DNA of 64,000 nt, taken from positions 4,154,001 through 4,218,000 of the forward strand of contig JBLDXI010000024.1 of assembly GCA_047495785.1 (NCBI GenBank). Direction: 5' to 3'. Below are positions 16,701 through 61,300 of this stretch, one piece after another. The notes under the pieces are model-generated. The model worked only from the letters and a program-made list of their open reading frames with translations, had not been told where the DNA came from and did no database searches. This stretch comes from Lepidodermella squamata. Taxonomy: Eukaryota; Animalia; Gastrotricha. The translations under genes and the position numbers were made by a program. The number at the start of each line of letters is the position of its first letter. The stretch's first letter is position 1.

Positions 16701-19700
16701 ACCTCAAGTTCAATAGAATCGATGAATTCGATTGGATATACAGTTGTCAGCGTGAAATTCCCTGGCACCTTTCCAGCAAAGTTCTGCCTGACCCCATCGC
16801 ACAAACGTCGAAATGATGTTTCGCATCCATCGTCTATGAGGCGGATGAACACTTGCGGCTCCAATTCATATCGCTTAACGCCGTAATAGTCAACAGAAAT
16901 CAAATAGGTGAATTGGTGGTGCAGCTTGTTACTTAGTATTGGCATGAAAGCCCAGTTCTTTAGATCCGCTTTATCAAAGGTAAATGCAAACCATATCGTA
17001 GCAAGGTATGCTACTACGCAAATTATCATCAGCGAAAAGACGGAAGCATTCTCAGCCAGAAGAGTGGTAAAATTGGCCAAAATCTCAGTTAGCTGTATCG
17101 TATTTGGCGAGATTAGAAGATCGGCGCCGAAATCCCCGAAATACGAACATTTGAACGCCACTCTAGATTCCGTTGAATCGGCTTCTAGCTCAAAGTCTTC
17201 GTCATTGGTTGCGTTTGCATCAGAAGTATCTCGCCTCAATCTTCCCCCTATTATCTTATCGTCTGATGCGAAGCCAAGGCGTAAATGATAGCCATAACAT
17301 CTCTGCATCTCGCAAACTGATGGTGGCAAATCGTCCGTAGGTGAAAATCGACTTAAGTTCTTTTTCGCGAATGCGCTAAGCGTGAATGAGTTGTTCGCAT
17401 TTGATCCTAGAGCATTCGACCTCTTGTTGGCAAAAGTAGTAAGAGCTTGTTGGGGAACGATTACACGAAGCTCAGTTTTCGTCTCGTTGCTGGTCTTCAG
17501 GGCGCCATAAATCGAATGTACACTCGTAGCTACGGCGTCTTTGGTTACATTAAGGGACCAGTACCAAGAGCCAGCTGTTGGTGTCGCATTGAGGGAGATG
17601 TAAACAGAATAATCGAATTGAATAGCTGGAAAAATTAGAATAAAATCCCCCGCTTCTACAGATATCGGAAAAGTTGCAAGGGATCCAAGCTTGTCCGCGT
17701 TTGTCGAAATGTCGCATTTCACTTTACTGATATCGCACTGCGACTCGACTTTTTCGGTCGAAAACTGGCTTGCCTTGCGCAACATAGGGTAACCAGTAAG
17801 CCGTACTGGCAAGGTTTTGTTGAGTACCAGTTTGTCGGACCCGTAGAAGGCATGTAGAGATATAGTGGGCATGTTAAATGGCTTCGTGACATCGAATACA
17901 TTCGAAATATAAGCCGTTAGGACAATCGATACTTTACTGGAGTCATCCATGCCCCCAGGAGCTGTTGTAATCAATTCTCTCCAATTCTTAGCTTCAGGGA
18001 CTTCCAAAGTAGCCAAGTTCGAGCTCAGTTTGAGTTTCGATAATTTAGACGGAATCGTGTTGTGGATTACGACTGCGAAGAAGGTTCCATTGAAGCTGAA
18101 GTCCTTGCCAATAGCGAGGGCGCTTTTGACCATCGCAGCGGTAGCTTCCATCATACTCCTGAAATCGCTGAGCAGGCTCTGCGTCTGCGAGATGGTCATT
18201 TCGACTTTTGTCGGCTTCACCACAAGTGACTCGGAATCAAACTTGTCGGCTTCGCAGCGGACGGAAGTTGTTGGTAATATGATACTAGACGATTCCGGCT
18301 GGGGCAAAAGCTCCTTTTCCATAACAGTTTCTAACACGGAGCTCACTGAATCGATGTAAGCTAAAGAAGGAATAGTTCATAAAAAAAACAATTAAACATA
18401 GAAGCAGTCTTGCCTTGAGAAATCGACAAAATGGTCTCTGTCGTCAAATTTGCAGCCATTTTCTGGTATCGATTGAGGAGATCTGCGGAGAGTGACATGA
18501 ATATTTGCTAAAAAGTAGCAAATCGCTTGAAATATGAACATTTCATTATGAACTTTTACCGAATCAACAATCACATTGGCGGCGCTCGATGTGCTGGAAA
18601 TCGCTTTTGCACTTTCTTGAATTTGCTCATTAATGGTAGTTACATTGCTAACAAGGACTTGATCCGGAAGTCTAGCTACTGTTGCCAGCTCTGTAATCAG
18701 CTCGTTTGCTTTAACGGTAGTTGTGCCAATATCGGAAATCGTTGAAGTTGCTGTTGAAGCCGTTGATGTTGATGTTGATGTTGGTGTAGTTGTGATTGCT
18801 ATTGAGTTCTACTTTGAGACGAATATTCAAAAAACAATAGTCAGGATACCTGTTCCACAAGTTTTTCCCGTCCAAAATGCAGAGCAGCTGCAAGTATCTA
18901 CGGCGACACAGTTTCCACCGTTGAGACATCCGCCAATTGATGAGCAGTCCGGATTGGAACAACTCGACCCCGACCAACCAGCATTGCAGTGGCAAACATT
19001 TGTTGAGATGCAAATCCCTCGACCAGAACAATTTCCAACAGATACACAAGTCGCTATATTCCGAAATTAAAAGGTGCGACCTTGAAATACCCAGAAATGA
19101 TTACCATTATCGCAATTGGCTCCATACCATGTTCCAGGGCAAGAACATTGATTCGGAGATGTACACGTCCCGCCATTTTTGCAACCGCCAATATCAGTGC
19201 AATCAGCTATAAAAATGGAGGTAATTTGTATTAAAAACAGTGGCATGAAAAGCTAACCGATTGAACAGTCCGCCCCCAACCATCCGGTGTTGCAAGAGCA
19301 CGTGTTCGCGGTTACGCAAGAACCCTGCCCTGAACAATCGGCCACAGAAGAGCAATTTGCTAAAAAAGGTTTGATAACAATTTTTCTAGAACCTATATTC
19401 GAAAGGAACCTGTTGAACAGTTAGTTCCGGACCAACCACTGGCGCATAAACAGTTATTAGGAGCCACGCAGGTTCCGCCATTGAGACATTGCCCGATAGG
19501 CGCGCAGTTAGCTGAAGAAGGAATCATTAGCAAAAGTTACTGAGGGTAATAGTGCAACTGACGTTTGGAGCAATCGGCACCGTTCCAGCCAGTCAAACAT
19601 GAACAGTTATTATAAGAAATGCAACTACCTTGACCAGTACAATTCGCCAAAGATCGACAATCAGCTGTAAATAATAATGGGAATGTGAAACTCAGATCAT

Positions 19701-22700
19701 GGAAAGAGCCTAATATACGATTGCTGCAGTTTGCCCCAATCCAGCCTACAGCACACGAGCACTGATTGGGGGAGGAGCAGGTTCCCCCATTCAAGCATCC
19801 ACCCAAGCTAGAGCAATCCGGTACACAGCTTCCCACGGTGCCAGCCCACGTCCTTGTAGTTATATTGCATCTGAGATAAGCGTAAGGTTGATTTGTACCG
19901 TTGAAAACGTAACCAGCCGATGAGCAGTTGTATTGCCAAACTGTGTCTCCGATGATTCTGTCACTCAAAGGAATCGACACGGGAACTGTGAAGTTATTTG
20001 TTGTCCCAGGGAACGTCGGCGGCTGCGGGCAGCTAGCATTTTGGCAAATAGGCGTCCCGCCCTGCCAAGAGCCATACGGCGGTGCACAGGTTTGGGTTAA
20101 AATTCCATCAACGAGCGATAAACCGGGGAAGCATTGGTAGTAAAGCCTTGTTACATTTCCGTTGACCTCAACATTCGGGAGTCGACTCGCATTTGTTGCC
20201 GTGAAATCGGGATAAAGCCCGCAGAGGGTCTTACAACGCAACCAATCCCCTTGCCAGTATTTGCTGGTCGTATTGCATGTGAGAACCGTCCAGTCTCCAT
20301 TTGACAACGAGTTGAAATAGCCTTGTAGACACGTGTAGTTTACGGACATCACGCTCGGCATTCCTACGATTTCAAGATCAGTCCACCGCATTGCTGGGGG
20401 TGGACCGCATGTACTGACACCGTCGCACGTATCCATACTAAAGTATAGGTCGGTCAGTGGATCGGCGATACCCTGACCAGGTCTACAGTAGGTGCTATAA
20501 AGTTTACATTCCGAGCCCGTTATCGCTGCCATGTCACAGCTAGAAGCAGTACACTTATCTGTGCATTCCTTCACAGTGCTAACAGATGAATTTGTCATTA
20601 AGGCAGCCGCTGGACATTTAAGCCCTCGAGCTCGGATGTACCTGCCCCTAAGAGGCTGGCCAAAGGGACGAATTTTCATCTCCGTCCATTGCAAGCTTTT
20701 GGGAGTGGCACTGTAAGGTTGACTATAAATTCCAGCTGTTCCGACTCCGTTGTAAGGGCCATTTAGGTTCCAATAGTTACTAGTTGTGGTGTTACAGATT
20801 TGTGGAAACCACCAGCCCCCAGTGCCGCATGGATCCACTCTAAAAGGTTTCCTATCAATAATGATTGGTCCCGCTGTTGAGCAGGTCTCGATTACGCTTA
20901 TCGCTTGTGTATATTGAGGACCGAAGTTGTAAAATGTCGCGAAATAAGCAAAAGCGTATCCATCAGGACCTCGCATTTCGACGAGGATTCCGTATTTCCT
21001 GGAAGCAGTTATCTTGCGCACGCTTTCAAGCCCCATCCAGTAGTTGCCCGTCAGCGATCCGAAGCCTGAGATGTATGAATCTAAATCTCGGTCAAATGAT
21101 ACGGTGTCATCGATTCTTCGTTGAAAAACCATCCATCCACCCCCTGTTTAAAAGTAGCGTAGATAATCAAAACGTTCAGGGCGTCGCATTTAACTAACCC
21201 ATCGTTTCTTGATCACAAAAAACGGTACCATTCCATTCGCCGGACGAAAAATCTGTGTATATTGTCGATACGAATTTCAGGTTTGACGGCTGCTGTTGCT
21301 GATAGTAGATGCAGTCCCTAGGTACTGGCCAAACTTGATATAAAGAAACTCAAGATAGAGAGATAAATAGCCTGAATTGAGAATGAAACTTGTGAAAGTT
21401 GGCTCCTCATTTGAATAGAGATAACCGTAGTTCGCTAGTCGGATTATAACATTATCGCCTGACAGCCATTGAATTGGGGGGTCACGATACAGTGCAACAG
21501 CATCACCATTAGTAATGACAGCACGCAATCCTAGATTTGGGAACTTGCAGTGCGGGGCGCCGGTAACTAAGAACAAAATATAATTCATCGCCAAGTAGTA
21601 ATGGGCGAATATAATAACTTTTCCGTCTAATGCCCATCATTGTGGTCGCCATCGACATGTTCAGTGAACGATATCCCAGAAAAGCCATTGTTTTCGGTTG
21701 AGTGGTAGCACCCCATACGTTGTTCAACTGAACATTATACGCGCAACCAACTTTAACCCACCATCCGCCTTCTAGCTTGGACGCCGCTGGGCCAAAACAA
21801 GCAGAAGCTGACCCATTATCATAGGTGGAGAATGGCTGCCAGTGATGATTGCTATCGAAAGCATTTACTATAATTTGCAAAATTCCAGCATTCAAGCGTG
21901 TCAGAAACCAGAAGTCACTAACTTGCATTGTTAGAAGCCGAGTCATAAAGTTGTGTGTCAATGTAAAGCCTGTAACCAGTATCTTCCGACTGTACTCGAA
22001 AATCTGACCAATGCCCAACATTGGTTTCCCCAGTTATTGGATCAGTAGTGATTGCGAAGAAATCCAAACATGTCCGCCGACCCAGCTGATAGATATACTC
22101 GTTTCCTTGGAATTGATAACCAATTATTGATTTTCGAACCCCATGGATGAAGTAAATTTTATCTGCGCATTTCACTTACCTAGCCAATAGTCGCTGGATT
22201 CGGTGAAAGGTTGGGCTGCAAATCCCCATTTGTAGTCTTGCCAACCTCTGGAGAAGTTCACATTTCCATTTGTTCTTTTCTGAATAATCTGCGAATATAA
22301 TGCACAAATTCTTACTTTTCAAACCTGATTTCAGCTATCTTACTGTAATGCCGCGGTAGTCAGTCGTATTCGATATATAGGGGAGCGTGTCAAAGAAGCA
22401 ATAAACTTTCAGTGGTTTCATTCCAATAGGGAAAATCCAATAAATGCCATTCGTTGAAGTATTATCAGTCTTGAAAATGTCGTAGCAGTCGTAAGGCTTT
22501 GGATTGACCGGCCTTATCATCATCACGCTGCTCTTTATCGAGTTGGCCTTTCCTTTCCAGGACGACCAAACGATTCCCTGCTCGAAGGTATTGTTAAGGC
22601 TTATCCCGTTCAAGTTGGAATCGAGGCAGGAACCGGATACCCAGTTCTTGAACCACCACCCACCGGATCTGTTCGAGTAAACGCGAAATTCTTGGCCATT

Positions 22701-25521
22701 GTGTGTTAACAAGGAATCTCCTGGTGTTTCGGTGTCATTAAGCCAGTTGTAACTGTTGACGTTCAGCTTGTAACTGGTACTAGCATTCCCGATGGAGAAA
22801 CTCTGGTACCTTGCAGTTCGGAAATTTCCATTCGTGTACTCCAGAGTGATAGCCAATTCGTAAATCGGCCCAGCTGTTGTTATTTGATTAATAGCTGTGT
22901 TACCAAGGTAAAAAGCCTGCTTAGTATCGCCGAATCCGGTTTCGTAAGTTGCGAAGTCCTGATCGAAGCTTTGACTTGAGCCAGCGTAATTTCTTTGAAT
23001 CACCGTCCAACCACCCTCATGAGCCGACATCTCACAGTAGGCTTGCACTGCACTGCCGCCAGGGGGATAAATTGTGTAGACTCCGCTTGGTGCGTGCGGT
23101 GAGTTGATAGCTATGTCAGCGCAATCGACAGGGGTCTGAAAATTAAGCGCAACACCTAAAATGCGCCACGTTTAATGAATTTGTATTTTGCCAAGTCATA
23201 TTACCAGGAACACCGAAATAATCATTTGGTTGCCGTCTAACCATCATTTGAATTTTTCTGATGTACTCAACAGTAGGCCAATTTATTCCTTCATAGGCTG
23301 ATGTCGAATTGTAAACACTGCAAAAATTGTATTTCATATTAAATGACTTTTAAAAGTCGAGCTCTCTCCATTTTATATGTCAAAGGCTTCGTATAAATTT
23401 CACTCAAACCTACCCGTTGAGACTATAGACACTACAGGTAGCTCCGTACCACCAACCTCCTTTATTGATATCGGCACAATTTTGACCAGCCACGTTATCG
23501 TTATCTCGATCGCGGGTGCTGAATTGCTTTCCCATTACTGCGTTCAGTGGGCTCGCCGCCATGTTCCCAATGCCATTCCTAGGAAGCGACAGCGTATAGT
23601 TCGTCGACGAATCAGATATTCTGAATCCTCCCCACGTCTGAAAGGCGTTTTGAACATTCTCCAAGTCTGCCACGTAAATTGCAAATCGATAGGAGGTGTA
23701 ACGCGTACTCGTGATCGCAGAAATGCTATCGAGCCCCAACCAAAAGCTGTGATCGAATGAACCGAAGAATGATTGGTATTCGACCCAAGTTCGGTAGAAG
23801 TCGACCTCGGGTGATGCGCGGCGCTGAATTACAGTCCAGCCACCACCTAATGCCTTCATATCGCAGTAGGCTAGAATTGGGCCAGATCCATAGGGATAAA
23901 TTGTATAGGCACCACTGGGCGCGTATGGCTGTCTCATCGCTATATCCTCACAGTCGACCGGAGGTAACGTCAATTGATCTAGAGTGTTCATTTATCCAAC
24001 GTAAATTATTTCAATTTAAAAGGTTTTCGACTTACCACAATGGGGCCAAGGGTTCTGAGCTGTGTCATTGCTTGTATATCCAATGGGGCATTGGCACCCA
24101 GCAGCTGAGCATACAGTGCAGCCAGCATGGGCTAGACAGCCATCAATCAGCATTCTCACTCTCATATTAGGCGGGGGAGAAGAACTATTCACAGGTAAGA
24201 GGCGCAACTTTTGCGTCCTGATTACAGGGCACAATACAGTCGGATGAAAATACGCGGTCGATGTGGCATTTGGTGAAGTTGGGTAAATTACGGGTGGACT
24301 AGTAGGATCTTGTTGATTGATTAGCACGGGAATTAATAACTCGCCCATTCCAGCCTTGGCCAAGAAGGCCAGAGAAAATGAAGTTAAATAACCGAATCCG
24401 AGCTTTCCTAGCGCAATTCTGATAGTTCGAACTGAGACTTCACGACCGAAGTTGATATCCAAATATATGTTGACTTCAGACCCACTAGGTTGCCAACCAT
24501 TGGGACTAGGAAGATTTCCGTTAACGTTTGCTGCTGTACCCGTTGAGGCGGTGATTGATCCGCCCCACTGGGAAATCATCGACATCAGCTCGATATTCTG
24601 GCAAGCCGTTGCTAAGAAAAACATGAAGCTCATTGAGTTCCTACAGATAAGAAATAGTCTATATTTACATTGGGCACATGTTGGCCCTTTCCAGTCATCG
24701 ACACACGTGCACGTGTCTGGAGCTGTACAGCTGCCACCGTTGAGACAAGGATTCGAACACGAGAAAACCGCGCAGTAAGTTCCTGAGTAACCAACAGCGC
24801 ACTGACATGTCTCCGTCGATACACATGTCCCTCCATTTTGACACGGCTGACTGCACACAACTGATTTTGACGCAAAGTCTTATATTTAAATGTTTTCGCC
24901 GTCGAATTTCTCACCGATCTCGCAGTATTTCCCAGTATATTCCGGTCTGCAGTTACATACACTTACAGGGCCCGCACTCCATGTGCAAGTGCCACCGTTG
25001 TAGCAGTAGGGATACTCATAGCCCGTCGGGTGACACATAACTGTTCCTAAATAAATAGAAAATTCAGTGATTTCATGAACTGAAGATCTTGAATCCACCA
25101 GGAAATTGCCAGCATGACGCAGTTAGAGAGGGGTTAGAGAGATTCTTACCTGTCGTTCCACAGGTCACCCCAGTCCACGAGCCCGGGCAGTAGCAGTTCT
25201 TCTCTTTGCAAGTTCCTCCATTGTTGCATTGAGCACTGCTAGTACAAACTGTTTGATACAAGCAGTATTAGCTTCAATATAATAGTGCTGGATCTAACTT
25301 GTTGGCGTTGCTTGATCACACTGCGCTCCGCCCCATCCAATATTGCATTGGCAAGTATTTGGGGCGGTGCAATTGCCATTTTGACATGCCGGGCTGCATG
25401 ATTCTAAAAAGAATCAGAAATGCCATGGGGAGTACTGCGGCTGCTTGAACTTACGCGAGCATGCCAGCCGCAGCTTGCTACTTGAGATTACGAAGATCAA
25501 CGTAAAGGTAATTAATAGCAT
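13713..25521 (-). CDS. Polycystin-1-like gene A: SP-EGFx5-discoidin(FA58C)-4x fibrinogen C-terminal domain-PAN-Sushi x3-4-EGFx~7-S/T stalk-GAIN-like-TM1-PLAT-TM2-5-TOP-channel
   Basis: Signal exon MLLITFTLIFVISS at 25521. FReD motifs (YCDM..GGGWTVIQRR, FWLGL, GGWW, NLNG). PKD1-family hallmarks HPWLSI..RP..SNWTRVERLSC, GPIRIKQQRV, GRWLDNATSVVFVDFNLYN, DGWNSLE. Last exon 14005-13713 joined by a 56-nt intron. Confidence 0.9.
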
Positions 25522-26489
25522 TCCATCAAATGCTGGTTACAGCGACATAAAACTGGATAGGTAAACACGAAACTAATCCCCTGAAAATCAACCTCAATAA
25601 GTGTAGAAAACTTCAACAACATTTGCGAATAGTGGTATTATTTGGTTTAAATGGTTTTTCAGATTTCGTTTCCATTGGATTGATTCAACTTAACATCTTA
25701 TAGCTCTTAAGATCTTGCAAAAGCAAGCAATTTATAGACTTATACCATAGAAGCTGGGAATTCTATTGTTTATAGATGATGGCTGGTTTCGGGTCTAATC
25801 GAACTTTTCGAAACGTTATTCAATGCCTGCACGAAGCACTAGCCTATTGTCCGGGGAGGACAATGGATCACTATAAGCATAATAGATTCCCAACATTTTT
25901 ATTATTACCGTCGCCTTTTACATTCTTAATTGCTTCTAACGCTTCTTCATTCATATTTTGTCAATCGATAATTGCCGCTTTACGTATCAAATCGATGAAG
26001 TCGCGCTTTACGACGATGAGAACGCTATGATGATTCGATTAAAACATTTTATATAACATGTTTTTATAATACTATGTTATTCAATACTAGTCGCGCGATG
26101 CGCAAGTTGAGCGCGACTGGCCCGCGTACCAACCAATAGCGGCCTGCGCTCACCCCCTACACCATGGGTGTATTTTTATATTCAGCCAGGCCTGCCCGAA
26201 CGCAAAAAAAGCCGGGCACTACCAGGCTGTACATTTTTTTATTCTGCCCGCACAGCCAGACTCGGAATATAAACGACAAAACATTCTAATGATGCTCTTT
26301 TTCCAGATGTTTTTCAACGCAAACTCAATTTAAATTGAGAATAAAATTAAAAACAATATCAATGTTTAAAAATAAATGGCTCCTGGATGCGACGCAATTA
26401 CGGTCGAAATGCTCAAGGCCGATGTTGATACCAAAGCCAGCGCGCTTGAATGTATATTTCGAGAGATTTGGCGAGACCAAGCGATTGGC

Positions 26490-31400: not shown

Positions 31401-34400
31401 GGAATTTGTGCACAGCCTAATCGCTGCACCTGCATTGGAAGTTGGACAGGCATTGACTGTTCAAAGAAAAATAACGAAACGACCTCAAAAACTGCCGTTT
31501 CGATCTCTTTCATCTCTGCAATGCCGCCCCAGACATTGATAGCAGCAGCGACTCCAATCAGTTCTGTTGCAATTGAAGCTTCGACACGTATCAGCGCGAA
31601 TGATAATTCAACGGCTTTAGCTGTGTCGTCAACTGCCTTCATGGCTGACTTGGCCCCCGTTATAGCTAAATACGCCGATCTAGCGAGCCAAATGGCCCCT
31701 GATGTTGTAGAAAATATTTCATTGTCTTACGCTACAGCAGCAAGCGCTGTCATGTTCGCGATGTCTGAATCAGTCACCACCATGGAGGAAACAAGCCCTC
31801 TATCTCTTAACCTCAATGATAAAAACACCAAATGCAAGATTGATCAAGCTGCGACTACAACACCGAGCCCTAAAACTGCACTATCAGCTGATGAGGTTAG
31901 TGAGCTTCGAACACTGCAGCCAGATAAACCCTATAATAATTGCTGTTAATTGCAGTCATCAAAGCTTTACCAAAATTTCAATCAAATGATTGATGGTATG
32001 CTTAAAATGGTCGAGGTCAATGTGAAAACGGGCAAAAACTTCACATTTAGTGGCAAATTCTTTTCGATACTTCTAAATGTAATGGATGCCAAAAGGCTGC
32101 CAAATTTAAAAGTGGAGACCATTCACGCAGCTGTGGTGTTTCCCAATACGACATCCGCCGCAGAATTTATCGACTCCAAAGCATCAGGAGTCTCGATTAA
32201 AGAAACTGACACCGTCACTGTTGTCTTAACAGCTTACATCGTTAATGTCCTCGACCCAAAGCAGCCGTTCAACATGCCAACCATTTCGGTTAAACTTCTC
32301 TATCAGAAGAAAGAGCTGATTCTCAAAAAGGGCTATCAGGTAAAAATAACTGGGAAGCCTGTTGTCTCCAAGGCAGCTATGCTTAGCGTTCAAAAGTCAG
32401 ATGCTCAGTGTGACGTTAGTACAATTGCATGCGACGTGAGTACGAACGCGGATACACTGGGATCGCTGGCTCTTTTCCCTGTTTCCTCTGGCTCTGGAGA
32501 TTTTGTGCTGATATTCCCAGTCATCAAGTACAACTACAAGGCATATCTATCTTTGAACAGCACGCCAACTGTGAAGAGCTATACCTGGTCTGTCAATGTT
32601 ACTCAAACCAGTGTCAGCACCAGTTTGAATGCTACCCTCGGAGAACTCAAATCAAGCTACAATACAGATGTCGAACTGCGAATAGTGATTCCACAATCAG
32701 CATTGCAGGACTTTGCTAGGATGCAAGGGGTCTCCTCAACAGAAAATGTCACATTTAAGATGCACGTTTACACAAAGAAAGACTTCTCCAGTTTCTCGAC
32801 TGTGGACGACTTGCCAGCAGATGCTTGCCAACTTCAGCGATGCAATGGTTACCATCTTAAGGTAGGATTCGCCAGGGCGCGGAACACGAATTCAAGGAAA
32901 AGACGCGATGCATCTGACTCGAGCTCTGATGAGGATTTCGAGCTGGATCCCAGTTCTACTGAATCAGCCGTCACCTTCAAATCGTCATATTTCGGCGATT
33001 TCGGGGCTGATCTCGTCATCTCACCGAACACCATCGAATTCTCCGATATCTTCGCCAATTTCGCAACGCTTGTATCTGACAACGCATTTGTACTCGCGTT
33101 CCAAGTAGCCGCTGTAGTGTTCTTCATCATCGGAGTGATTGTTGTTTGGCGATTCGACAAACTGGACATCAAAGAATGGGCATTCATGCCTTTGAAGAGC
33201 AACAAGCCGTACGAAGTCCACAAGTATCTCGTTTCAGTCGATCATTTCGGCGTCAAAAACTATCATCTGAAACCTGTTGTCCTACTACGAGCTTACGGTG
33301 ATATCAGTGATACAAACTGGAGAGTCCTTGAAGATTACGGGAGAGAAAAAAATTTCAACGGGAGGAGACCGGCCAATTTCATGATGACTACAGCATTGCC
33401 TATTGGTCATATCGAGGCAGTTGAAATTCGACTTCATAGTCGATTCAGGGCGCCACACGGCAGCAAGCCTCTTCAGATGCAAATCGATAAAGTTGTCGTG
33501 GTTGACATTGAGAAGGCGCAAAAGTTTGTTTTCTTGACCATGGCTCTCATGAAAAGTGGCGACGTGAAGATTAAGGAACTCGCGACTGAGGACGAGATCA
33601 AAGGATTCAAGTACTTGGTCAGCGCCCATTCTCGAGTTGGCTTGTTCAGCTCTCACCCGTGGCTATCCATCACGAGGCGTCCTCTTCCGAGTAACTGGAC
33701 CAGATGCGAACGGCTAGCTTGTGTCGTCAGTGCCCTTTTCATGGCCATGCTGGTGAATGCAATGTTCTATGGTAAAGAGAGTAAATCACCCCGAGTCGGC
33801 GTCAATATCGGAGGATTCTTTCGCCTGTCGTGGTTTACAGTCTACACAAGTTTCATCGGATGTGTTATCGTCATCCCTCCAACTGCAATAATGGCCTTCA
33901 TTTTCAAGCGAATTCGACGTCGATCAGCTGAGAATAGCCAATACACAACTATTTTCAATGTGGCATTGGGATACCAGCAACGAGATGCCGACGGCAAAGA
34001 AAAGAAGCCATTCCAGCTTCCGTACTATTGTGCCATCATCGCTTGGATTTGTAAGTTTTACATCGCATGCGTCATTTATTGTTGATTTCATTCATTTCTA
34101 GTGGTCGCTGGCTGCGTTGGAGCCTCTTCCTTCTTCATCGTCATGTACAGCCTGATGTGGGGCAAGGAGAAATCGCTGCAGTGGCTCAGTGGAATGGTCA
34201 TGAGTGTTGTTCAGGACATAGTTATCATTCAAACAGTCAAGGTTGCATTGTTGTCTATCTGCAGTTCAACCTTGTTGTCTCTGCCTGATGACGGTCTTGA
34301 CATTGGCAAGGTGACATTCTCGAAGAACAGCTCCAATAAGAAATCAGAGCTCTTCAAGCGCATGCGGAACATCATCGGAGGGATTTTCCACCACATCATC

Positions 34401-36774
34401 TACGTTGTTGCATTTGCTATAGTGATATCTGCAACACAGAACAGACTTGCCTATCAACAAATTGAGGATTTAAAACCACTCGTGGAGATGCGTGATGTAC
34501 CTCAGATGGGTGTGATTAAGGACTACACCCAGATTTACTCGTGGCTGAATAACAATCTACTGCCGCAGTTTTTCGCTGCCAACCAGTTGAGCAAAGGCCT
34601 GAAATTCAACGTGAAAAACATCTATCAAGTTCTCAATCATGATGTGGTAGTTCTCGGGCCAATTCGCTTGAGACAACAACGAGTCCGCACCGGTAATTTA
34701 GCTTGAATTGAAATAAACTAAATGATTCACGTGATTACCTTATTGTAGCTCCCTGTTTGTTGGAAACTTCGGCGATTCCTCAGTATGTCAAGAGATTCAC
34801 AGACTCACTCGTGTTGAATACTTCAAAATGTCAGAATCAATACGTTGGCCAACTTGGAGTGGGTGCGGACACCGAAATAAGGCAATTTTCGAACTTCAAT
34901 TGGACTTACAACGTGAATACTACTGCATGGTTGCCAGAGAATGTCACAACTGAGCAGGCTCCATGGATTCATCGAGAGGACAGTGGAATTCCTTACTCAG
35001 GCTGGCAAGCAACCTACACCAGCGGCGGGTATTACGTCGACCTACCAATTAATCTTGCGAAAGCTCAAGCTTTCATTACTGGGCTTCAGTCGAGGAGATG
35101 GCTGGACAACGCAACTTCAGTTTTGTTCGTCGACATGGTCCTGTTCAATGCTCAGGTCAACTTGTTCATCGCTGTCAAAGTGGTTTTCGAAGCCTTGAGT
35201 GCTGGAGGCATGACCTATCACGCGAGAATGTATCCTCTTCAGTTGTATCAATACATCGGGGCCAGTTCGGTCTTTGTTTTCGCCATACAAGCCATCTGGA
35301 TTTTGCTGGTTATCTCGCATCTGATCAAGATCGTTATCAAAATAAAGAAGCAAGGCTTCAAAAAATTTCGAAGAGATGGATGGGACTTGTTAGAGTTGGC
35401 TCAGATGTTGATAGCCTTGGCCATTGTTGGATTGTTCATTGCTCGAATTGTCGTTGTGATGAAAGTTGTTACTCGACTACAAACCGATAAGACTTCATTT
35501 GTGAACTTCGATCTCCTGGTCAACTGGGAAGCTTTGATGGCTAATCTGTACGGCATCACTTTTTTCATGACTATGCTGCTGTTTTTCCGCCATTTGACCT
35601 TCAATAAGTACTGGTGCATCTTCTTGGGAACGCTCTCCAAAGGCAAGGCGGATATATATTCATTCCTGTCCACTTTTGTCATCATCACATTACTGTTCGC
35701 CCAACTGGGTTATCTGAGCCTTAATACAACTTGTAACGAGTTTCAATCATTCACTGCTTCGATAATGACCCTGGTTCAGAATATCATCGGGGTAACTGGG
35801 TCCCTGATGTCACTGAGCTTCACCTCGCGTTACATCATGCTGTTCTGCATGGCTTATTCAACAATCGTCATGTTTTTGGCTGTTCAGGTCTTCATGACAA
35901 TTATTTCAGTCACGTACCGTCAAGTAGCTGAAAATGTTGAAGAAAACACTAACTGGGATCACGAACTATCGAGCTACATGGCAGAAGAATTAACGTCCGC
36001 TTTTGTTAAAACCCTTGCGAAGGAAACTGCTGCTCCTGTTTTCAAACCTGTTGGAGAACGCAATCTAGCGAAATGTAAGCCTTTGCTTTAGTTTATTGAT
36101 CTAACACTTTATATATTACATTAGTGGAGTATTCAATTTACCGTTTTTCGCGCCTTGTTGAGTCGCGAATCGAGGACGATGCTTACGAGAGAGTTGCGAA
36201 ACGCGAGCGTTGTCTGATGCATTGGATAGACATGAAATTGCATGAATTACGGCTGCAAAGACGTATGAACCCTGTTGAGCGTCAAGTCACCGCATCATCG
36301 AACACCACAACTAAGGTCAAAGATCCAAAGCTGTTCCTATGTGGGGACAAACTTATCACACAACGGGGTCATTTTGTTAAAAATGTCCAGCAATCCCGAC
36401 AACCTGCACCAGAACCTGTTTTAATTTCTCAGGATTGGCCCTGCCAAATAATTCCTGGCTTCAATTTCAATGCCAACACACTACACTCGCCGAAACAGAT
36501 TGTCATGCCTCTTGCTAGAACGGCTATGCCCGACATTAAGTTCAAGGAAAAACCAGTCAACAAAGTGGCTCCAGTCGGTAATCCAGCTTTCAACACGCCA
36601 CAAAAGAGACCAGATGTCAAAATTCAGATCACTCCCGCTCAGAGATCGCTGTGGGGTATGCTTTTCCCGAATAAAAAGCAGCCTGGCAGCTTGCCTGTCG
36701 GATCCGTTCGTGGATTGTACGATCCGAAGAAACAGGGCGGAAGTAGTCAGTTGAACCCATATCCAACACATTGA
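28411..36774 (+). CDS. Polycystin-1-like gene B: SP-EGF-lectin-like domain-Thr-rich stalk-(half EGF)-EGFx3-GAIN-like-TM1-PLAT-TM2-5-TOP-channel-long C-tail
   Basis: First exon MKMQTAELLLILSIFADSTLQ (28411-28474), then an EGF exon 28531-28626. Core ORFs 31950-34085, 34101-34706 and 34757-36091 carry HPWLSITRRPLPSNWTRCERLAC, GPIRLRQQRV, RWLDNATSVLFVD. Last exon 36125-36774 in frame. Confidence 0.9.
29821..29955 (+). repeat. Coding minisatellite, 3 x 45 bp (IPTVPxxTTxxQxTT) in mucin-like stalk of gene B
   Basis: ATCCCCACAGTTCCTG recurs at 29821, 29866 and 29911. Confidence 0.85.
30097..30213. repeat. Imperfect palindromic insertion in gene B intron
   Basis: AAAATTAAAGGGACATTTTTTTGAGTGCGCTCAAAATT pairs imperfectly with AATTTTGAGTGCATGAAAAAAGCTTCCCTTTAATTTT. 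Confidence 0.6.
30415..31001. mobile_element. piggyBac-type MITE (587 bp) in gene B intron
   Basis: Perfect 14-bp TIRs CCCTCTAAGGCCGG / CCGGCCTTAGAGGG, flanked by TTAA (30411-30414) and TTAG (31002-31005). Confidence 0.85.
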
Positions 36775-37022
36775 ATAAGCAGACTTCTAATTGATGAAAC
36801 ATTGGAATTGTGTGTTTATGACATTGAGATTCTTTGCGCGCGTTTTTTTGAACCATATTATCAAACATATTATTCTGACGGTTTCATTGAATAAAAGCGA
36901 CCCTGCGTTTTCTTTATATATAATGAAACTCTCGAACTCAGAAAATTTTATTTTATTTATTAGTGCGTCAAATTATTTATTAACAGGAAAGTGTTGATAT
37001 GAAAGTTCTCATTTAGTGAAAT

Positions 37023-54383
<17,361 letters not shown>

Positions 54384-55315
54384 CGGAAAACTGACTATAC
54401 AAAACAATTTAAACCAGATTTTTCATTCAATCATTGCGAATGCAAGATTTTGACGGTCTGCGTGGGCTGGAACCGCCAGCATAAAGAACTCTAGAATTGC
54501 TAATCGTGCAGTCCAGGGAAACAGCTAGAAATGAATCGCGCCAGATTGGGTTCCAGTAGTTGAGTGTTGTTTTAGTCAATTCGTCGCTCTAACCCGCAAA
54601 GCAAGGTGCTAACCCAGCTTCTTCGCCGGCTGATTGATCTCTAAGCGACCGCTCGAAGCTTTCTTTGTTATTTGTTTGCGTAACACTTTTCCGCTCATTG
54701 TCTGGAAGATATAACATTTAGAAAGATTGGTAATTGCACAAAGCGGCGAATCTATTATTCATCACGTAGAGCCCTGCCCACTCAACGCATAATTGATCAC
54801 GATTACCGCCACCCTCCTCCGCTTTTTTGGGCTAATCAATCAAGAATAAGTTCAATGGCGCAGTTCTCAAAGTTCTGATGGCGTTCGCCTCTTGTCTTAC
54901 GCAAAAAAGCATCACATGATTCATAGGTCTTTGATGAGGCGTAATTTTGTTTGTCGGCGGTTTTTCGATTTTTCTGCCATTTCGATCTGCGCCAAGTACT
55001 TGATAATGAGGGGGATGAGGGGTATCGTACCCTCCAGTTTGGGAGGCCAAAGTGGGAAAACACCCGAAAAACCACAAGGGGGCCTTTTGGATCCTACTTC
55101 GCGCCGTGCGACCGCGTACGGACTAACCCGCGTTCGGGACTAATTCGGGCTCGGGCCCTAACAATGCGTTCAGTTGCCAAACTTCGTTGTGAGGTTCTGT
55201 GAAGTCAAATTTCAATTCAAACGCAGCTGACTGTCAAGAAAAAGAGAAATTTTATTCGTCTGAAAAGTTATTGGTCACACTGTTTCGTCAAATGAATTCT
55301 CACGTACAATCAAGT

Positions 55316-58300
55316 TCACATTTTGCTCTCATAACCGGGATAAAGAGGTTGAAAGTTATCTTTAACGGTTTTACCGTACATGTCTCTTATTGCATCTGCT
55401 GGGTAAAATCGTCCATCAATTCCATTAGGATTTTTCTTCCCAGGCATGAAATAATCCAGAACTGACTCAGCAGGCTTTGCATTCCGAACCGGTCTTGTTT
55501 CGATTGCATAATCAATCTCAAGAGTTGCAGCGATTGGCTGCAGTTCAGCATTGACTGGTCGTGGTGGGTGGTGATATCCCAGCAAAGGCCTAGGCATCGT
55601 CTCAATCGTGGCGATTTCAGGAACCCTGTTTCGCTGGCATTCCTCTAGTACTGTCATGAACTTCTCCTCGTCAATTTCCACTGTTGCGTCCAAAGAATAC
55701 GATTCGGCTAATTTCAAAGCTCGGTGCAGTGCATGCTCCACTGAAATTTGGGACAAATTTGTAGAATATCAACAATGCGGGAATGACTCACATTTTGCGA
55801 AGTTTTTATCCCCAATAGGTTTGAATTGCTGATTTTTCCTGTCCTCGCCATTACGGCGCTTGATCATTTTGCTGAATTCGTCCGTCATATAATCGGAAAC
55901 AGCCTTGTCCCACTCCGTATTCCTTTCAACATTCTCCGCAACCTGGCCGTAAGTTACTGATATGATAGCCATGAAAATCTGAACTGCCAAAAACATGACA
56001 ATGGCCGAGTACGCCAGACAAAACAGCATGATGAAACGCGATGACGAGCTGAGTTGCATCAAAGTCCCAGAGACTCCGATAATGTTCTGCACCAGCGTCA
56101 TTATACTCGCTGTGAAAGTTCTAAATTCGTCTCTTGTATCTCCCATGGTCAAATTTCCCAGTCCAGAGAACATCACAGTGATAAGAGCAAATACAAAAAC
56201 AAATGACGCCAAATCTCTTTTCCCCTTCGACAGAGTGGCCAAAAACATGCACCAATGCTTGTTGAACTTGAGGTGCCGGAAGAAGAGCATCATTGCCATG
56301 AAAAAGGCTATGCCATACAAGTTGGCCATCAATTCCTCCCAGTTGATTAGTAAGTCGAGATTCGCGAACGATGAGCGATCTGTCTGCATTCGGGTGATTG
56401 TTTTGATGATGAAATAAATCCTAGCTCCGAAGAGACCAACAATTGCGAATGAGAGAAGAATTGAAGCGGCTTCGAGAACATTCCAGCCATCGCTGAACAC
56501 TTTTCTGGCTCCCTTTTTCCGCAGCTGATATAGAAACTTCACTGCCAGAGAAATTACGAGAAGGATCCATATTCCTTGGACTATGAATATTGGGACAGAT
56601 CCAGCTCCGGAGTATTGATACAGTTGAAGTGGATAGAGTCTAGCATGATAATTCATGCCACCAGCCGCCAGCGCCTCAAAAACAACTTTCACAGCCATGA
56701 AAACGTTAACCTGAGCGTTGTAGACTACGAAATCGACAAAAAGGACCGAAGTAGCGTTGTCCAGCCATCGCCCTGATTTGAGTTGTCTCACCAATTCCTG
56801 AGCCCTCCACATTTTTGTAGGGAGATCGACGTAATACCCTCCGGTTTTGTAACTTGCCATCCAGCCTGCGTAAACAAAGCCGTTATCATTCTCCCGGAGT
56901 AGCCATGGAGCTTCTTCAGTTGAAATATTGGTAGGTTTCGTCCATGTAACTGGGTAGGGGACCCAGCCGTACTGAAAATCTCTGTTTTCCGAAGTCGCAC
57001 CCACGCCATAAGCGGTAGAATACGGGTCTTGGCATGTCACATTTCCACCAGCTAAGCTGTTGAAATACTTCTGAACAGCAGCCTTGACAATAGTTTGGGT
57101 TAGAGGGCAATTTCTGTTGGCGACCCGTTGTTGGCGGAGTCGAATCGGCCCAGTGATTACCACATCATGGTTCGGCACCGAGTAAATATTTTTTGAATTG
57201 AATATCCCGCCATAATTCAGCTGATTTCCATTCAAGAAATTCGGAATTATCTTGCTATCCAGCCAGTTGAAAATAACGTTGTAGTCTTGAACGGCATCTA
57301 GAACTTGTTGATACCTGTCCACAGTGACCAAAGGCTTAAGATCGTGAACCTGCAGGTAGCGATACGAGTTCTGGGTGTATGAGATGACCAATGCAAAAGT
57401 GATGACGTAGATAATGTGATGGCTGATGCCGACTAGAATGTTGCGAAGTCTCTTGAAAACTTCCGTTTTTTCAGCCGTGTTGTCTGAAAGCAAATAGGCT
57501 ACTAATACTCAAAAAATGTTGCAAATTCTACCTTTCGAATAAATAATCTTTCCGATGTTCAATCCATCATCAGGGAGTCTCAATAAGGATGACGTGAAGA
57601 TTGACAGAATGAATACTTTTACAGTTTGGACGATGATGATGTCTTGAACTAGATGCAAGACCATTCCGGACAGCCATTGTAAAGACTTCTCGCGGCCCCA
57701 AACCAGGCTATACATAACAACCATGAAAGCTGAGATTCCGACACAGGCTGCGACCACTATGAAAAAGTGAATTTGAAAGATACATTTCAGTGAATTAATT
57801 ATTTAATTACGAAGCCATGCGATTGCGAGAGTCCAAAAAGACAGCTGGAATGGTTTTTTCTTCTTTTTACCAGGTTCAGATTCTTCTTCATCGTTTTTCT
57901 TGACAGGAGCGTTAAAAACTGTCAGCCATTTGCTATTTTCAGCCGTTCGCCTTTTGACACTCTTGAAGATGAACCCGATTACAGCCGTAGGCGGGATGAT
58001 GATAATACAGCCGATAAAACTCGTGTAAAGTGTGAACCACGAGATTCGGAAGAAACTTCCAATTTTTATTCCGACACGTGGCGAAGTAGATTCCTTGCCG
58101 TAAAACATGCAGCTTACTAGCATTCCCATGAAAATAGCTGCTACAACACATGACAATCGTTCAGCCCTGGTCCAATTGCTAGGTAGAGGACGTTTAATTG
58201 TCGAAAGCCAAGGATGGTTGTCTGTAATTCCTGTTCGAGAATGGCCACTCACAAGATAACGGAAGCCTTTGATTTGATCTTCTGTAGCCAGATTGGCTAC

Positions 58301-61300
58301 AACTCTATCACCAGCTCTCATTGTTGAGCGGACTGGGAAAACAAACTTTTCGCCACTAGCCACATCGAGAAGAACAATCTTATCGATGTAGAGCTGAAAT
58401 GGTTTGACAGACTGTTTCCGGCTAAGAACCATAACTTCGACAGCATTACAATATCCGATCGGGAGGCTCGTGGTCAAAATAAAGTTTTCAGGATGGTCTC
58501 CATTGAAGTTCTTCCTCTGGCCATCAGCCATGAGCCGCCAGTTAGTACTACTGATCTCGCCCCGAAATCTAGCGTAAATCCGAGGTTGCAGGTCATAGCG
58601 CAGAACTTTGTAGTAGTCGATAGATATCAAATAGTTATGCGTGTGATTAGGTTTGTTTTCGATCAAAGGTAAGAACGCCCAAGCTTTCAGGTCGCTTCTA
58701 TCAAGCGCTATCATGAAGGCTAGGAACCCAAGGTATAGGTAAATTGCAGCGACCATGAAGGCAAGGACGAAAGCGTTATCTGAAACTAGGGTCGAGAAGT
58801 TACCGAAAACCTCAGAGAATTCTATAGTATTAGGTGATATCAGCAAATCTGCTCCGAAATCTCCGAAATAAGAGGATTTGAATGCCACCTCGCTCTCAGA
58901 CGTGCTCGGCTCGACATCGAACCCGTACGATGTGTCATTCAGGACGTATTCTGTCGACCTTTTACGTCTGTTATTGGTGGACTGACCGCTTGAAGCGAAC
59001 CCTATTCGCAGATGGTACCCGAAACACTTAACCATTTCGCAAGCAGAAGTTGGCAAATCGTCCAATGCACTGTAGCCCGAAAAGTCCTTTCGATTGAAGA
59101 CGAAAATGGTGAAGTTAGCATTTTCCCCGAGACCAAGTTGGTCTTTCGCGAATGAATGTAAAACTTCAGAAGGAATGACAACGCGCAACTCTTTAGTAGT
59201 ATCATAGTTGAACTTCAGTTTTCCATACCGTGGATGCAGGCTGTCGCTTACTGACGCCTTCGTAACATTGACAACCCACGTGTAAGATTTTACAGTTGGA
59301 GTAACATTCAGCGAAATGAAGGACGAGTATGAATTCTCTACCACCGGATATATGAGGAAGAAATCGCCGGCTCTCGGCGTTGCTGGGAAACTAGCCAAAG
59401 TTCCAATCGTGTCGCCATTTGTAGACAAGTCGCATTTCACTTTGCTGACGTCACACTGAGCTTCTACTTTACGAGTACTCAGCTGAACTGCTCTGTTGAC
59501 AACTGGCTTGGCCGTGATTCTTATCGGATATTCATTGTTTAGAACAAGCTCAGTCTTATCCATGTAGACCTTGATAGAAACCGTCGGCATGTTAAACGGC
59601 TGATTGACGTCGAACACATTCGAAACATAGGCCGATAGAACTGCCGACAGCTTGGAGTTTGCTTTCAATGCTGCCGGAGGCTTATAGAACATATTCAGTA
59701 CATTAGCGGGGGATTGGAACGTTGCGGTTGCTAGATTGGTTCGTAACACGAGACCAGAAGTGTTGCCGGCTTCGAAGTTAAACACTAAAATTGAGAAGAA
59801 CTTCCCGTTGAAGGTGAAATCTCGCCCGGTAAAGAGGGTTTTCTTAACCATAGCAGCCATTCGGTCAAGCATATCTCTGAAACCTGAGTAAATTGCCTCA
59901 GCTTCGTCTTCGTCTAACGTTGTTTGTGTTTCAAGATTTTTCTCTTCTGTGATGAATTTGTCAGCAACACACTTTTTTGTTCCAGCCTGCGGTGCGATAA
60001 TGTCACCTGGGGGAAGCTGAACTGTCTCAACGAGATTCGACATAACAGTGCTTGAAGCCTGAGCATAGGCCATTGTCATTGCCGTAATAGTTTCGACAGG
60101 CACAGTCGAGGCAATATCGACGTATCGCGAGAGTAGAGGTGTGAGATTAGAGAAAAAATCGTCCTATATAAAAGGGTGCAATGGAATAAATGCAAATAAA
60201 ATCTAAATTCATACTGTGATTTTCGTCAGCTTTGATGCATTCGAAGTTTGAGCGATGAATTGCGAGCTGTCGATAGCGATACTGCTCAGTGCGACAGCCT
60301 GCTCGAGAAGAGTTTGGTTAGACAATTTGCTGAATTGTTCGAGCGCAGTTGTTGGGTCTTTCAAAGTAACAGCCGAGGCTGAGCAATCTGAGCCGAAAAA
60401 TCCGATGAGGCATTCGCATTTGTTAAGCGAAACGCATTTTCCAGCGTTTTTGCAACCACCAAGACCAGAACAGTCAGCTGAAAGAAATAATCTGGCATTA
60501 ATTGATTTTTAACGAAGGCCTAGCCAACCTGTGGAGCATGACGGACCAGTCCAAGATGCGTTACAGATGCAATTACCCGGGGCAACGCAGAAGCCGTTTC
60601 CTGAACAGTTATTGACCGAAGAACAGTCAGCTGATTCAAGAAATTTCAATCAAGAACAATTAATTATAGAGCGGGTTCTGAAACATACGTATCGTGCAGT
60701 TCGTACCCAGCCAACCCGATTTGCAAATGCATAGATTAGGCTGGGAACAGACAGCGTTCTTTGGACAGCCGCCGATTCCAGAACAGTCCGCTGAGCATTT
60801 GTCACATTATCACAAATTAGAATCGAAGTAAAATCGGAAAAACTTACGTGTTGCGCAATCAGAGCCAAGCCAATTAGATTGACAGTTACATGTTGATGGT
60901 GCAGAACAGTTTCCATGACCGCTGCAATTGCTACGGCTTGAACAGTCAGCTAAGTTGAAACCACGTTATCGATTCTCATTACTGCTCTATTTTGTTGAAT
61001 ACTTACGAGTACTACATGTTGCCCCGCGCCAAGATCCCGACACGCATGAACAGACATTTGGCGAGGTACAAGTCCCGCCGTTGAGACATCCACCGATTCC
61101 TGAGCAATCAGCTGTTTGAAAACGTGATTTAGATTTAGATTTCAGCTTGACGAATTGTTTTTCATAAAATTACCGGTGGCGCAATCGACACCAAACCATC
61201 CGGAATTACAGCTGCATGTGTTAGCGGACACACAATTGCCATGATTTGAACAATTTTGACGCAAAGAGCAGTCAGCTTTTAGTATCATTTGTTTTAGAAA

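What the first reader, a model, noticed from the sequence alone, without database searches (positions are those of the whole stretch)
17098..58969. Polycystin-1-like receptors with a dead GPS autoproteolysis site and a conserved furin site just upstream
Seen: immediately before TM1, at the GPS position (followed by the typical PNTIxF), all four paralogs read E/G-D/F-E-x-x-x-x-S-T-x-S-x-V-x-FK[C/S][10 protein letters not shown][L/V]ISPNTI. About 25-30 aa upstream each has a polybasic convertase motif followed by an acidic/Ser-rich linker: A RLRR|D (17231-17242), B RKRR|D (32895-32906), C RYKR|D (40519-40530), D RRKR|S (58958-58969). Established: PKD1-family and adhesion GPCR GAIN domains self-cleave at W..GC...CxCxHL|T/S, needing His and a Thr/Ser/Cys nucleophile; RxR/KR is the furin consensus. 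Inference: His, the nucleophile and most GPS cysteines are lost (HL|T becomes YF|G), while the furin motif is kept despite divergent flanks. This suggests ectodomain release switched from autoproteolysis to protease-dependent cleavage, leaving a longer acidic tethered peptide plus the invariant GDFGADL stalk.
Basis: partly seen in the sequence, partly recalled or inferred. Interest (0 to 1): 0.9.

Follow-up and report, generated by a model that had tools for sequence, protein, structure and literature searches.

The report
Polycystin-like receptors: dead self-cleavage site, furin motif
Four neighbouring polycystin-1-like receptor genes keep the fold of the self-cleaving domain before their first membrane helix but lack every residue needed for self-cleavage, and a strictly conserved furin-type motif in a floppy loop just upstream suggests, without proof, that an outside protease now makes the cut.

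Summary
Four paralogs (A, C and D on the minus strand, B on the plus strand) read FK[C/S][10 protein letters not shown][L/V]ISPNTI before TM1. Each has an R-x-[K/R]-R motif 27-29 residues upstream, at exactly the stated coordinates.

Mapping about 90 canonical homologs puts Y-F-G on H-L-T of CxCxHL|T. An AlphaFold2 model (pLDDT 82) has GAIN domains as its best structural matches (CD97 Z 10.5), with YFG at the last hairpin turn. The RxxR motif lies in the low-confidence loop before the last three strands.

The motif is the only conserved feature of that loop. It holds in eight lineages: the four paralogs plus four unnamed metagenome relatives at 28-42% identity.

The dead site is old. The genes nest in a well-supported clade of spiralian PKD1L-like proteins (brachiopod, mollusc, annelid, flatworm), all reading FKSN-x-x-G. 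Many of these carry di- or polybasic motifs in the same loop.

Gene C is transcribed and spliced. Cleavage itself is not shown. Because three strands follow the site, nicking would more likely give an associated heterodimer than free shedding.

Uncleaved PKD1 paralogs are already known (PKD1L1, PKDREJ). I found no paper on a convertase site inside a polycystin GAIN domain. The scan flagged the same pattern at seven or more other loci of this genome.

The parts
16060..18346 (-). Gene A, large exon (upper bound is the ORF start). It holds the GAIN-like domain, dead GPS, TM1, PLAT-like region and TM2-3. The donor follows 16060 and the next exon starts at 16006.
   Evidence: ORF; translation; splice pattern shared by all four genes
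17231..17242 (-). Gene A polybasic motif RLRR, followed by D
17135..17143 (-). Gene A Y-F-G at the position of GPS H-L-T
17096..17137 (-). Gene A stalk [14 protein letters not shown] (equivalent to the last GAIN strand, the Stachel)
14006..15817 (-). Gene A exon block with the polycystin domain and PKD channel
   Evidence: Pfam PF20519 1.3e-29 and PF08016 1.1e-24
19537..24858 (-). Gene A upstream ectodomain exons: fibrinogen-related and EGF domains
   Evidence: Pfam
31956..34050 (+). Gene B large exon. It is preceded by a 60-nt in-frame GT-AG intron (31896-31955) that contains the TAA at 31947-31949. The next exon starts at 34102.
32895..32906 (+). Gene B polybasic motif RKRR, followed by D
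32988..32996 (+). Gene B Y-F-G at the GPS position
32994..33035 (+). Gene B stalk GDFGADLVISPNTI
34757..36091 (+). Gene B exon block with the polycystin domain and PKD channel
   Evidence: Pfam
39354..41700 (-). Gene C large exon. The intron 39301-39353 is spliced out in run X1.
   Evidence: spliced joint 39300/39354; same junction found by pattern
40519..40530 (-). Gene C polybasic motif RYKR, followed by D
40423..40431 (-). Gene C Y-F-G at the GPS position
40384..40425 (-). Gene C stalk [14 protein letters not shown]
37352..38927 (-). Gene C exon block with the polycystin domain and PKD channel. A further intron, 37301-37351, is spliced out in X1.
   Evidence: Pfam; joint 37300/37352
57811..60103 (-). 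Gene D large exon (upper bound is the ORF start). The next exon starts at 57756.
58958..58969 (-). Gene D polybasic motif RRKR, followed by S. It is residues 340-343 of the model, in a low-pLDDT loop.
58862..58870 (-). Gene D Y-F-G at the turn between the last two beta-strands (model residues 373-375)
58823..58864 (-). Gene D stalk [14 protein letters not shown]
58706..58765 (-). Gene D TM1 (approximate)
   Evidence: helix 405-435 of the model; hydropathy
58301..58633 (-). Gene D PLAT-like region, below the Pfam threshold and placed by transfer from homologs
55769..57493 (-). Gene D exon block with the polycystin domain and PKD channel
   Evidence: Pfam PF20519 3.2e-31 and PF08016 1.9e-26

Best explanation
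A, B, C and D are tandem paralogs of an 11-TM polycystin-1-like receptor/channel subunit. Their ectodomain ends in a GAIN-type domain that can no longer cut itself. The H-L-T triad reads Y-F-G, with an invariant Gly in place of the nucleophile, and the GPS Cys/Trp framework is gone.

A strictly conserved R-x-[K/R]-R motif sits in a flexible loop 27-29 residues upstream, just before the last three beta-strands of the domain. The most likely reading (inferred, not shown) is that a furin-type proprotein convertase nicks this loop in the secretory pathway. That would give an N-terminal and a C-terminal fragment held together by those strands, much as GPS autoproteolysis does. The C-terminal fragment would then begin with an acidic Ser/Thr-rich peptide, followed by the conserved stalk [14 protein letters not shown].

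The arrangement is not new to these four genes. It is inherited from a spiralian subfamily of PKD1L-like proteins.
For: Polycystin identity: Pfam Polycystin_dom and PKD_channel on the downstream exons; about 11 hydrophobic segments; 1013 HMMER relatives, most of them PKD1L-like.

Dead GPS: Tyr412-Phe413-Gly414 of D maps onto H-L-T of CxCxHLTSFGxxFxVPPNTIDF in canonical homologs. There is no other GPS-like motif in the window.

Fold: the AF2 model has pLDDT 82 and pTM 0.78. Its best structural matches are GAIN domains: CD97 Z 10.5, Gpr126 10.2, CELSR1 9.8, BAI3 8.7. The alignment end (model 384 against CD97 540) places Gly414 on CD97 Ser531, the residue mutated to block autoproteolysis in that structure (PMC12519206).

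Loop: RRKR is model residues 340-343, in a stretch with block pLDDT 54-61 and residues 336-338 below 50.

Conservation: P4, P2 and P1 are the only conserved loop columns across 8 lineages at 28-48% identity.

Wider clade: a 33-row clade with 99% support has lost the triad in every row, and 15 rows carry R.[KR]R. Lingula paralogs have SRRLL, RVKR or similar in the homologous loop. In the model of Lingula P0010, RVKR lies inside the loop 280-293 with pLDDT below 50, and the GAIN match is Z 16.5.

Expression: gene C is spliced in run X1.
Against: No cleavage data of any kind exist. Several members of the same dead-GPS clade lack any basic motif, including the planarian PKD1L-2, which is needed for mechanosensation (PMC11448475). 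So a convertase site is not obligatory for function. Two coral proteins have both HLT/HLS and RxKR motifs, so the two features are not mutually exclusive. Loss of the triad happened only about 4 times on the tree, and the independent-pairs test has no power. N-glycosylation sequons 7-9 residues after the site in A, C and D could hinder a protease.
Confidence: 0.55

Rival explanations
1. The GAIN-like domain is simply uncleaved, as in PKD1L1, PKDREJ or CELSR1. The basic cluster has another role, for example binding sulfated glycans, or pairing electrostatically with the acidic linker that follows it.
For: Uncleaved PKD1 paralogs exist and function (PMC9672506). Several clade members have no basic motif. 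The motif is always followed by an acidic stretch.
Against: A glycan-binding or charge-pairing role does not need the exact R-x-[K/R]-R register. Here P4, P2 and P1 are fixed while P3 and both flanks vary freely. The site is in a predicted flexible lumenal loop, which is the usual setting of convertase sites.
Confidence: 0.3
2. The site is cut, but by an extracellular or tissue-specific trypsin-like or other basic-residue protease rather than a Golgi furin-type convertase. Nicking would then be regulated at the cell surface.
For: Sequence alone cannot tell convertases from other Arg-specific proteases. Lingula relatives have only dibasic SRRLL, which is a weaker furin motif.
Against: The full R-x-[K/R]-R consensus, including P4 Arg, is kept in all 8 lineages of the window's family. 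P4 Arg is the furin signature (R-X-K/R-R; Hosaka 1991, as cited in PMC4890752).
Confidence: 0.1
3. The copies are decaying pseudogenes, and the eroded GPS is part of that decay.
For: There is an in-frame TAA at 31947-31949 in B.
Against: The TAA lies inside a clean 60-nt GT-AG intron. All four copies have long open exons with conserved splice junctions. Gene C is transcribed and spliced. The stalk, TM1 and channel parts are conserved over 28-48% identity relatives.
Confidence: 0.03

Closest known systems
Vertebrate PKD1L1 and PKDREJ (polycystin-1 paralogs without GPS cleavage)
   Same: These are 11-TM PKD1-family proteins that lack the HL-T/S tripeptide and are reported not to undergo GPS cleavage (PMC9672506). 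The PKDREJ rows also lack the triad in my mapping.
   Different: Their loss is separate on the tree. They have a REJ domain. I found no report of a conserved convertase motif before the dead site, and only 1 of 5 PKDREJ rows has an RxRR.
Polycystin-1 (PKD1) and sea urchin REJ3, cleaved at the GPS
   Same: They share the architecture from the GAIN domain onward and the same conserved post-GPS stalk, FGxxLxxPPNTIxF.
   Different: PC1 and suREJ3 self-cleave at HL|T (PMC1934368). Here the triad reads YF|G, the GPS Cys/Trp residues are missing, no REJ domain is detected, and the distal ectodomain is fibrinogen-related plus EGF.
Adhesion GPCR GAIN domains (CD97/ADGRE5, Gpr126/ADGRG6, CELSR1, BAI3)
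   Same: They are the best structural matches (Z 8.7-10.5 for D, up to 16.5 for the Lingula relative). Some, such as CELSR1, are also uncleaved. Gpr126 has an additional furin site in its ectodomain (PMC6954182, listed).
   Different: These are 7-TM proteins, not 11-TM. I recall the Gpr126 furin site as lying outside the GAIN domain, but I did not check this in the paper. The window's domain also carries a nested beta-sandwich of about 150 residues (model 177-328) that the matched GAIN domains lack.
Spiralian PKD1L-like proteins with FKSNFFG (for example Lingula XP_013397161.1 and XP_013397107.1, Haliotis XP_071110902.1, Schmidtea PKD1L-2 AKN21725.1)
   Same: They belong to the same supported clade (99%). 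The same F-K-S-N-x-x-G replaces CxCxHLT, and many have a di- or polybasic motif in the homologous loop.
   Different: They keep the two Trp-bearing GPS strands between the basic loop and the dead site, so the motif lies 50-70 residues upstream. The window's family has lost those strands, leaving 27-29 residues. They also score on Pfam PLAT, whereas the window's proteins do not.

Membership tests
Polycystin-1-like (PKD1/PKD1L/REJ) 11-TM family | C-terminal polycystin domain plus PKD cation-channel domain | tested here: met
   PF20519 and PF08016 on the downstream exon block of all four genes, E 1e-21 to 1e-31
Polycystin-1-like (PKD1/PKD1L/REJ) 11-TM family | Eleven transmembrane segments | tested here: inconclusive
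   Kyte-Doolittle scan of approximate gene models gives about 10-12 segments in the expected pattern. The splice models are only partly verified.
Polycystin-1-like (PKD1/PKD1L/REJ) 11-TM family | PLAT domain directly after TM1 | tested here: inconclusive
   No Pfam PLAT hit even at E<=10. However, D 391-722 aligns in one stretch with Lingula P0006 346-681, where PLAT scores 1e-21 at about 446-556.
Polycystin-1-like (PKD1/PKD1L/REJ) 11-TM family | REJ domain | tested here: not met
   No Pfam REJ hit on any exon tested. Human PKD1L3 also lacks REJ yet is counted in the family (PMC1934368).
GAIN domain (GPCR autoproteolysis-inducing) | GAIN fold (helical subdomain plus beta-sandwich) immediately before TM1 | tested here: met
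   AF2 model with pLDDT 82. Nine of the top 13 VIA matches are GAIN domains, six of them with Z 8.2-10.5 and about 150-170 aligned residues. Foldseek alone was weak.
GAIN domain (GPCR autoproteolysis-inducing) | GPS motif with conserved Cys pairs and two Trp | tested here: not met
   No Pfam GPS hit. The alignment shows the C..W...W..GC strands absent, and only one Cys (in A and C) at the CxC position.
GAIN domain (GPCR autoproteolysis-inducing) | Catalytic H-L-T/S/C at the last hairpin turn | tested here: not met
   Y-F-G occupies that position in all four copies, and Gly is invariant in 8 lineages.
Proprotein-convertase (furin-type) substrates | R-X-[K/R]-R motif in a lumenal or extracellular, accessible segment | tested here: met
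   The motif is present in 8 of 8 lineages. It lies N-terminal of TM1 in the ectodomain, in a low-pLDDT loop in two independent models.
Proprotein-convertase (furin-type) substrates | Actual cleavage after P1 Arg | not testable with these tools
   Needs protein biochemistry or proteomics.

The most novel reading that the evidence does not exclude
A spiralian-wide subfamily of polycystin-1-like sensory receptors gave up GAIN autoproteolysis. Instead it makes its two-fragment form by convertase nicking at the entry to the GPS strands. Formation of the fragment pair, and exposure of the conserved stalk, would then be under protease control rather than automatic. In the window's lineage the two Trp-bearing GPS strands were also deleted, bringing the site to within 30 residues of the stalk.
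Probability: 0.4. Interest if true: 0.7.

Novelty: new variant of a known kind. Interest (0 to 1): 0.55.

Why it matters
GPS cleavage is central to current models of polycystin-1 and adhesion-GPCR signalling, in which a tethered stalk peptide acts as agonist. How uncleaved family members work remains open. Here a whole clade keeps the GAIN fold and the stalk but replaces self-cleavage with a protease-dependent site. That would be a natural experiment separating the 'two-fragment architecture' from the 'autoproteolytic chemistry'. It would also give a switchable system for testing the tethered-agonist idea, by mutating RxxR or blocking the convertase. One member of the wider clade, planarian PKD1L-2, already has a mechanosensory phenotype (PMC11448475).

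Tried and rejected
1. GYHL[R/K] upstream as the real GPS remnant. I rejected this because HMMER/BLAST mapping and the model both place the HLT position at YFG. GYHL lies on an earlier strand.

2. Pfam GPS, REJ or PLAT on the large exon: no hit even at E<=10.

3. Word-indexed protein searches with exon A, and with the ectodomain of P0001, found nothing beyond P0001 itself. Relatives of the ectodomain came only from the exhaustive HMMER search.

4. Foldseek against the PDB gave only weak, scattered matches. VIA-align was needed to see the GAIN fold.

5. A raw Fisher test of lost triad against R.[KR]R (1/75 against 19/47, p 1e-8) overstates the case. On a tree the triad state changes only 4 times, and the independent-pairs test is powerless.

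6. My first two automatic splice models were wrong at the first junction of gene C when checked against the RNA joint. I replaced them with the junction pattern shared by all four genes. Splice sites further downstream remain approximate.

7. Literature searches for polycystin plus furin plus GAIN or GPS found no relevant paper.

8. The organism was not identified, because run and organism names were coded. Relatives point to a spiralian.
Full report
**Observation**

A six-frame search finds GDFGADL and SPNTI exactly four times. Gene A is on the minus strand (17117-17137), B on the plus strand (32994-33014), C on the minus strand (40405-40425) and D on the minus strand (58844-58864). All four read FK[C/S][10 protein letters not shown][L/V]ISPNTI.

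- A: RLRR, 17231-17242
- B: RKRR, 32895-32906
- C: RYKR, 40519-40530
- D: RRKR, 58958-58969

Each motif is 27-29 residues before the Tyr of YFG. The Arg codons differ between copies.

**What the genes are**

Each motif lies in a long exon of about 700-770 codons. This exon is followed, across 51-54-nt GT-AG introns, by exons that score on Pfam Polycystin_dom and PKD_channel (E 1e-21 to 1e-31).

The first junction has the same pattern in all four genes (IAW-x, phase 1). For gene C it coincides with a spliced joint (39300/39354) seen in contigs of run X1. That run also shows a second joint at 37300/37352. Gene C is therefore transcribed and spliced.

The TAA at 31947-31949 in gene B lies inside a clean 60-nt in-frame intron, 31896-31955. 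Upstream exons of A, C and D carry fibrinogen-related and EGF domains. Hydropathy of approximate gene models gives about 11 membrane segments.

The large exon has no Pfam GPS, REJ or PLAT hit, even at E<=10. The PLAT region can be placed by transfer. D 391-722 aligns in one stretch with Lingula P0006 346-681, where PLAT scores 1e-21.

**Is YFG the HL|T position?**

The exhaustive HMMER search gave 1013 relatives. Nearly all align from about residue 390-415 of D onward, that is, from the GPS strand.

Mapping Tyr412 of D onto each homolog puts Y-F-G exactly on H-L-T of CxCxHLTSFGxxFxVPPNTIDF. This held in about 75 of the first 150 proteins and in 90 of 145 rows after adding more. The following FGxxLxxxPNTIxF is conserved throughout. 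No other GPS-like motif exists in any frame of the window.

An AlphaFold2 model of D residues 40-475, built on the family alignment, has pLDDT 82 and pTM 0.78. Foldseek was uninformative. VIA-align against 48,161 chains ranks GAIN domains first:
- CD97: Z 10.5
- Gpr126: Z 10.2
- CELSR1: Z 9.8
- BAI3: Z 8.7
- then GPR110, latrophilin-3, GPR97 and GPR56

In the model, VAFKS (367-371) and DFGADLLI (376-383) form the last hairpin, with S-Y-F-G at the turn. The CD97 alignment ends at model 384 against chain 540. If that tail has no gaps, Gly414 falls on Ser531, the residue mutated to stop autoproteolysis in that very structure (PMC12519206).

Only about 165 of about 360 residues align to GAIN. Residues 177-328 match GOLD/SID1-type beta-sandwiches (Z about 6). 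The domain therefore looks like a GAIN with a nested sandwich.

**The basic motif**

RRKR is model residues 340-343. Residues 336-338 have pLDDT below 50, and the ten-residue blocks around the motif average 54 and 61. The motif follows the long strand that carries GYHLRIGFA and precedes the last three strands ([16 protein letters not shown]).

Only five representatives share the ectodomain part with D: P0001, P0002, P0003, P0005 and the fragment P0136. They are 28-42% identical and come from unnamed metagenome contigs. The four that cover the loop keep R-x-[K/R]-R at -28 to -31.

In the eight-lineage alignment, the loop has only three conserved columns: P4 Arg, P2 Lys/Arg and P1 Arg. The Gly at the former nucleophile position is invariant.

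**Wider family**

A tree was built on TM1-PLAT-TM3 columns, leaving out the GPS itself (FastTree). The four paralogs group together (97%), then with P0001, P0002 and P0003 (100%). That group sits inside a 33-row clade (99%) in which every row has lost the triad and reads F-K-S-N-x-x-G.

Named members of the clade:
- Brachiopod: Lingula
- Bivalves: Argopecten, Mytilus, Ylistrum, Tegillarca
- Gastropod: Haliotis
- Cephalopod: Argonauta
- Annelid: Dimorphilus
- Flatworms: Macrostomum and Schmidtea PKD1L-2

Many members carry SRRLL, RVKR, RKRR or RRRR in the loop that MAFFT aligns with the window's motif. In those proteins the two Trp-bearing GPS strands follow the loop. The window's family lacks these strands.

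A model of Lingula P0010 (pLDDT 77.5) matches the CD97 GAIN domain at Z 16.5. Its RVKR lies inside the only internal stretch with pLDDT below 50, residues 280-293.

Two other clades without HLT also often carry RxKR: the CxC...TF clade and the CFCKDLP clade. Vertebrate PKDREJ mostly does not.

**Limits of the association**

The raw count looks striking: R.[KR]R within 100 residues upstream in 1 of 75 HLT rows (the one is a misclassified family member) against 19 of 47 rows without HLT. The background density is 0.027 per 100 residues.

On the tree, however, the triad state changes only 4 times, and the independent-pairs test has no power. Two coral proteins have both HLT/HLS and RxKR. Several clade members have no basic motif, among them planarian PKD1L-2, which is required for mechanosensation (PMC11448475). 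The pattern is suggestive but not established.

**Interpretation**

Shown by these analyses:
- the genes are polycystin-1-like;
- the model has a GAIN-type fold (predicted, not solved);
- the catalytic triad and the GPS framework are absent;
- a furin-consensus motif is conserved in a predicted flexible ectodomain loop;
- at least one copy is expressed.

Inferred: a convertase cuts at the motif. Because three strands of the sandwich follow the site, I expect an associated pair of fragments rather than free shedding. The C-terminal fragment would start with the acidic Ser/Thr-rich peptide and the conserved stalk.

Main rival: the domain is uncleaved and the basic cluster does something else. 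The fixed P4/P2/P1 register with free P3 and flanks argues against that, but does not exclude it.

**Comparison with what is known**

- PKD1L1 and PKDREJ are already known to lack HL-T/S and to be uncleaved (PMC9672506).
- Earlier work assumed that all PKD1 members are cleaved at the GPS (PMC1934368).
- Furin sites exist in adhesion-GPCR ectodomains such as Gpr126 (PMC6954182, listed).
- Full-text searches found no paper linking a convertase site to a polycystin GAIN/GPS region.

I therefore rate this as a new variant of a known kind.

**Earlier notes of this scan**

The scan flagged the same pattern at seven or more other loci of this genome. One follow-up (s1-374079) reached the same reading on a different gene. 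Another note reports SEA-like domains with a convertase site in place of the G/SVVV self-cleavage motif. None of these were used as evidence here.

**Practical notes**

The source organism stayed coded.

Noticed in passing
window 58997-59455 (gene D, model residues 177-328); same region in A, B and C: The GAIN-like domain appears to hold a nested beta-sandwich of about 150 residues. On its own this sandwich matches GOLD, p24 and SID1 extracellular domains (Z about 6, and 8-9 in the Lingula relative). The matched adhesion-GPCR GAIN domains lack it.
   Followed up: partly
window 31896-31955: Gene B has a 60-nt in-frame GT-AG intron containing a TAA. Read naively, it looks like a premature stop between two ORFs in the same frame.
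   Followed up: yes
window 7549-12855 and L001 7110-9776: Ankyrin-repeat genes lie next to the polycystin cluster. The metagenome contig that carries the closest relative (P0001) also has an ankyrin-repeat gene directly downstream, which suggests conserved gene order.
   Followed up: no
window 17204-17230 (A), 40492-40518 (C), 58931-58957 (D): N-glycosylation sequons (NAT, NSS, NDT) sit 7-9 residues after the basic motif in three of the four copies. B instead has a run of Ser/Asp (SDSSSDED) that resembles secretory-kinase S-x-E/D sites.
   Followed up: no
window about 16075-16110 (A), and the equivalent in B, C and D: A lysine run (KKKKKK) directly precedes the conserved PLQLPFW at the end of the large exon in all copies, in the cytoplasmic loop before the next membrane segment.
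   Followed up: no
window 37823-38091 and 38541-38769: DNA run X2 holds, besides identical contigs, contigs 90-95% alike with many third-position-like differences. These could be close extra paralogs or a divergent haplotype of the channel exon.
   Followed up: no
VIA matches 9fqr_Hn, 8glv_AE and 9y6s_9f: Proteins of the axonemal doublet-microtubule 96-nm repeat (bovine sperm, Chlamydomonas, Leishmania) match the GAIN-like models almost as well as true GAIN domains do (Z up to 12.7). I did not identify these chains.
   Followed up: no
If that is right, replacement of autoproteolysis by convertase sites may be a wider habit of this genome.
   Followed up: no
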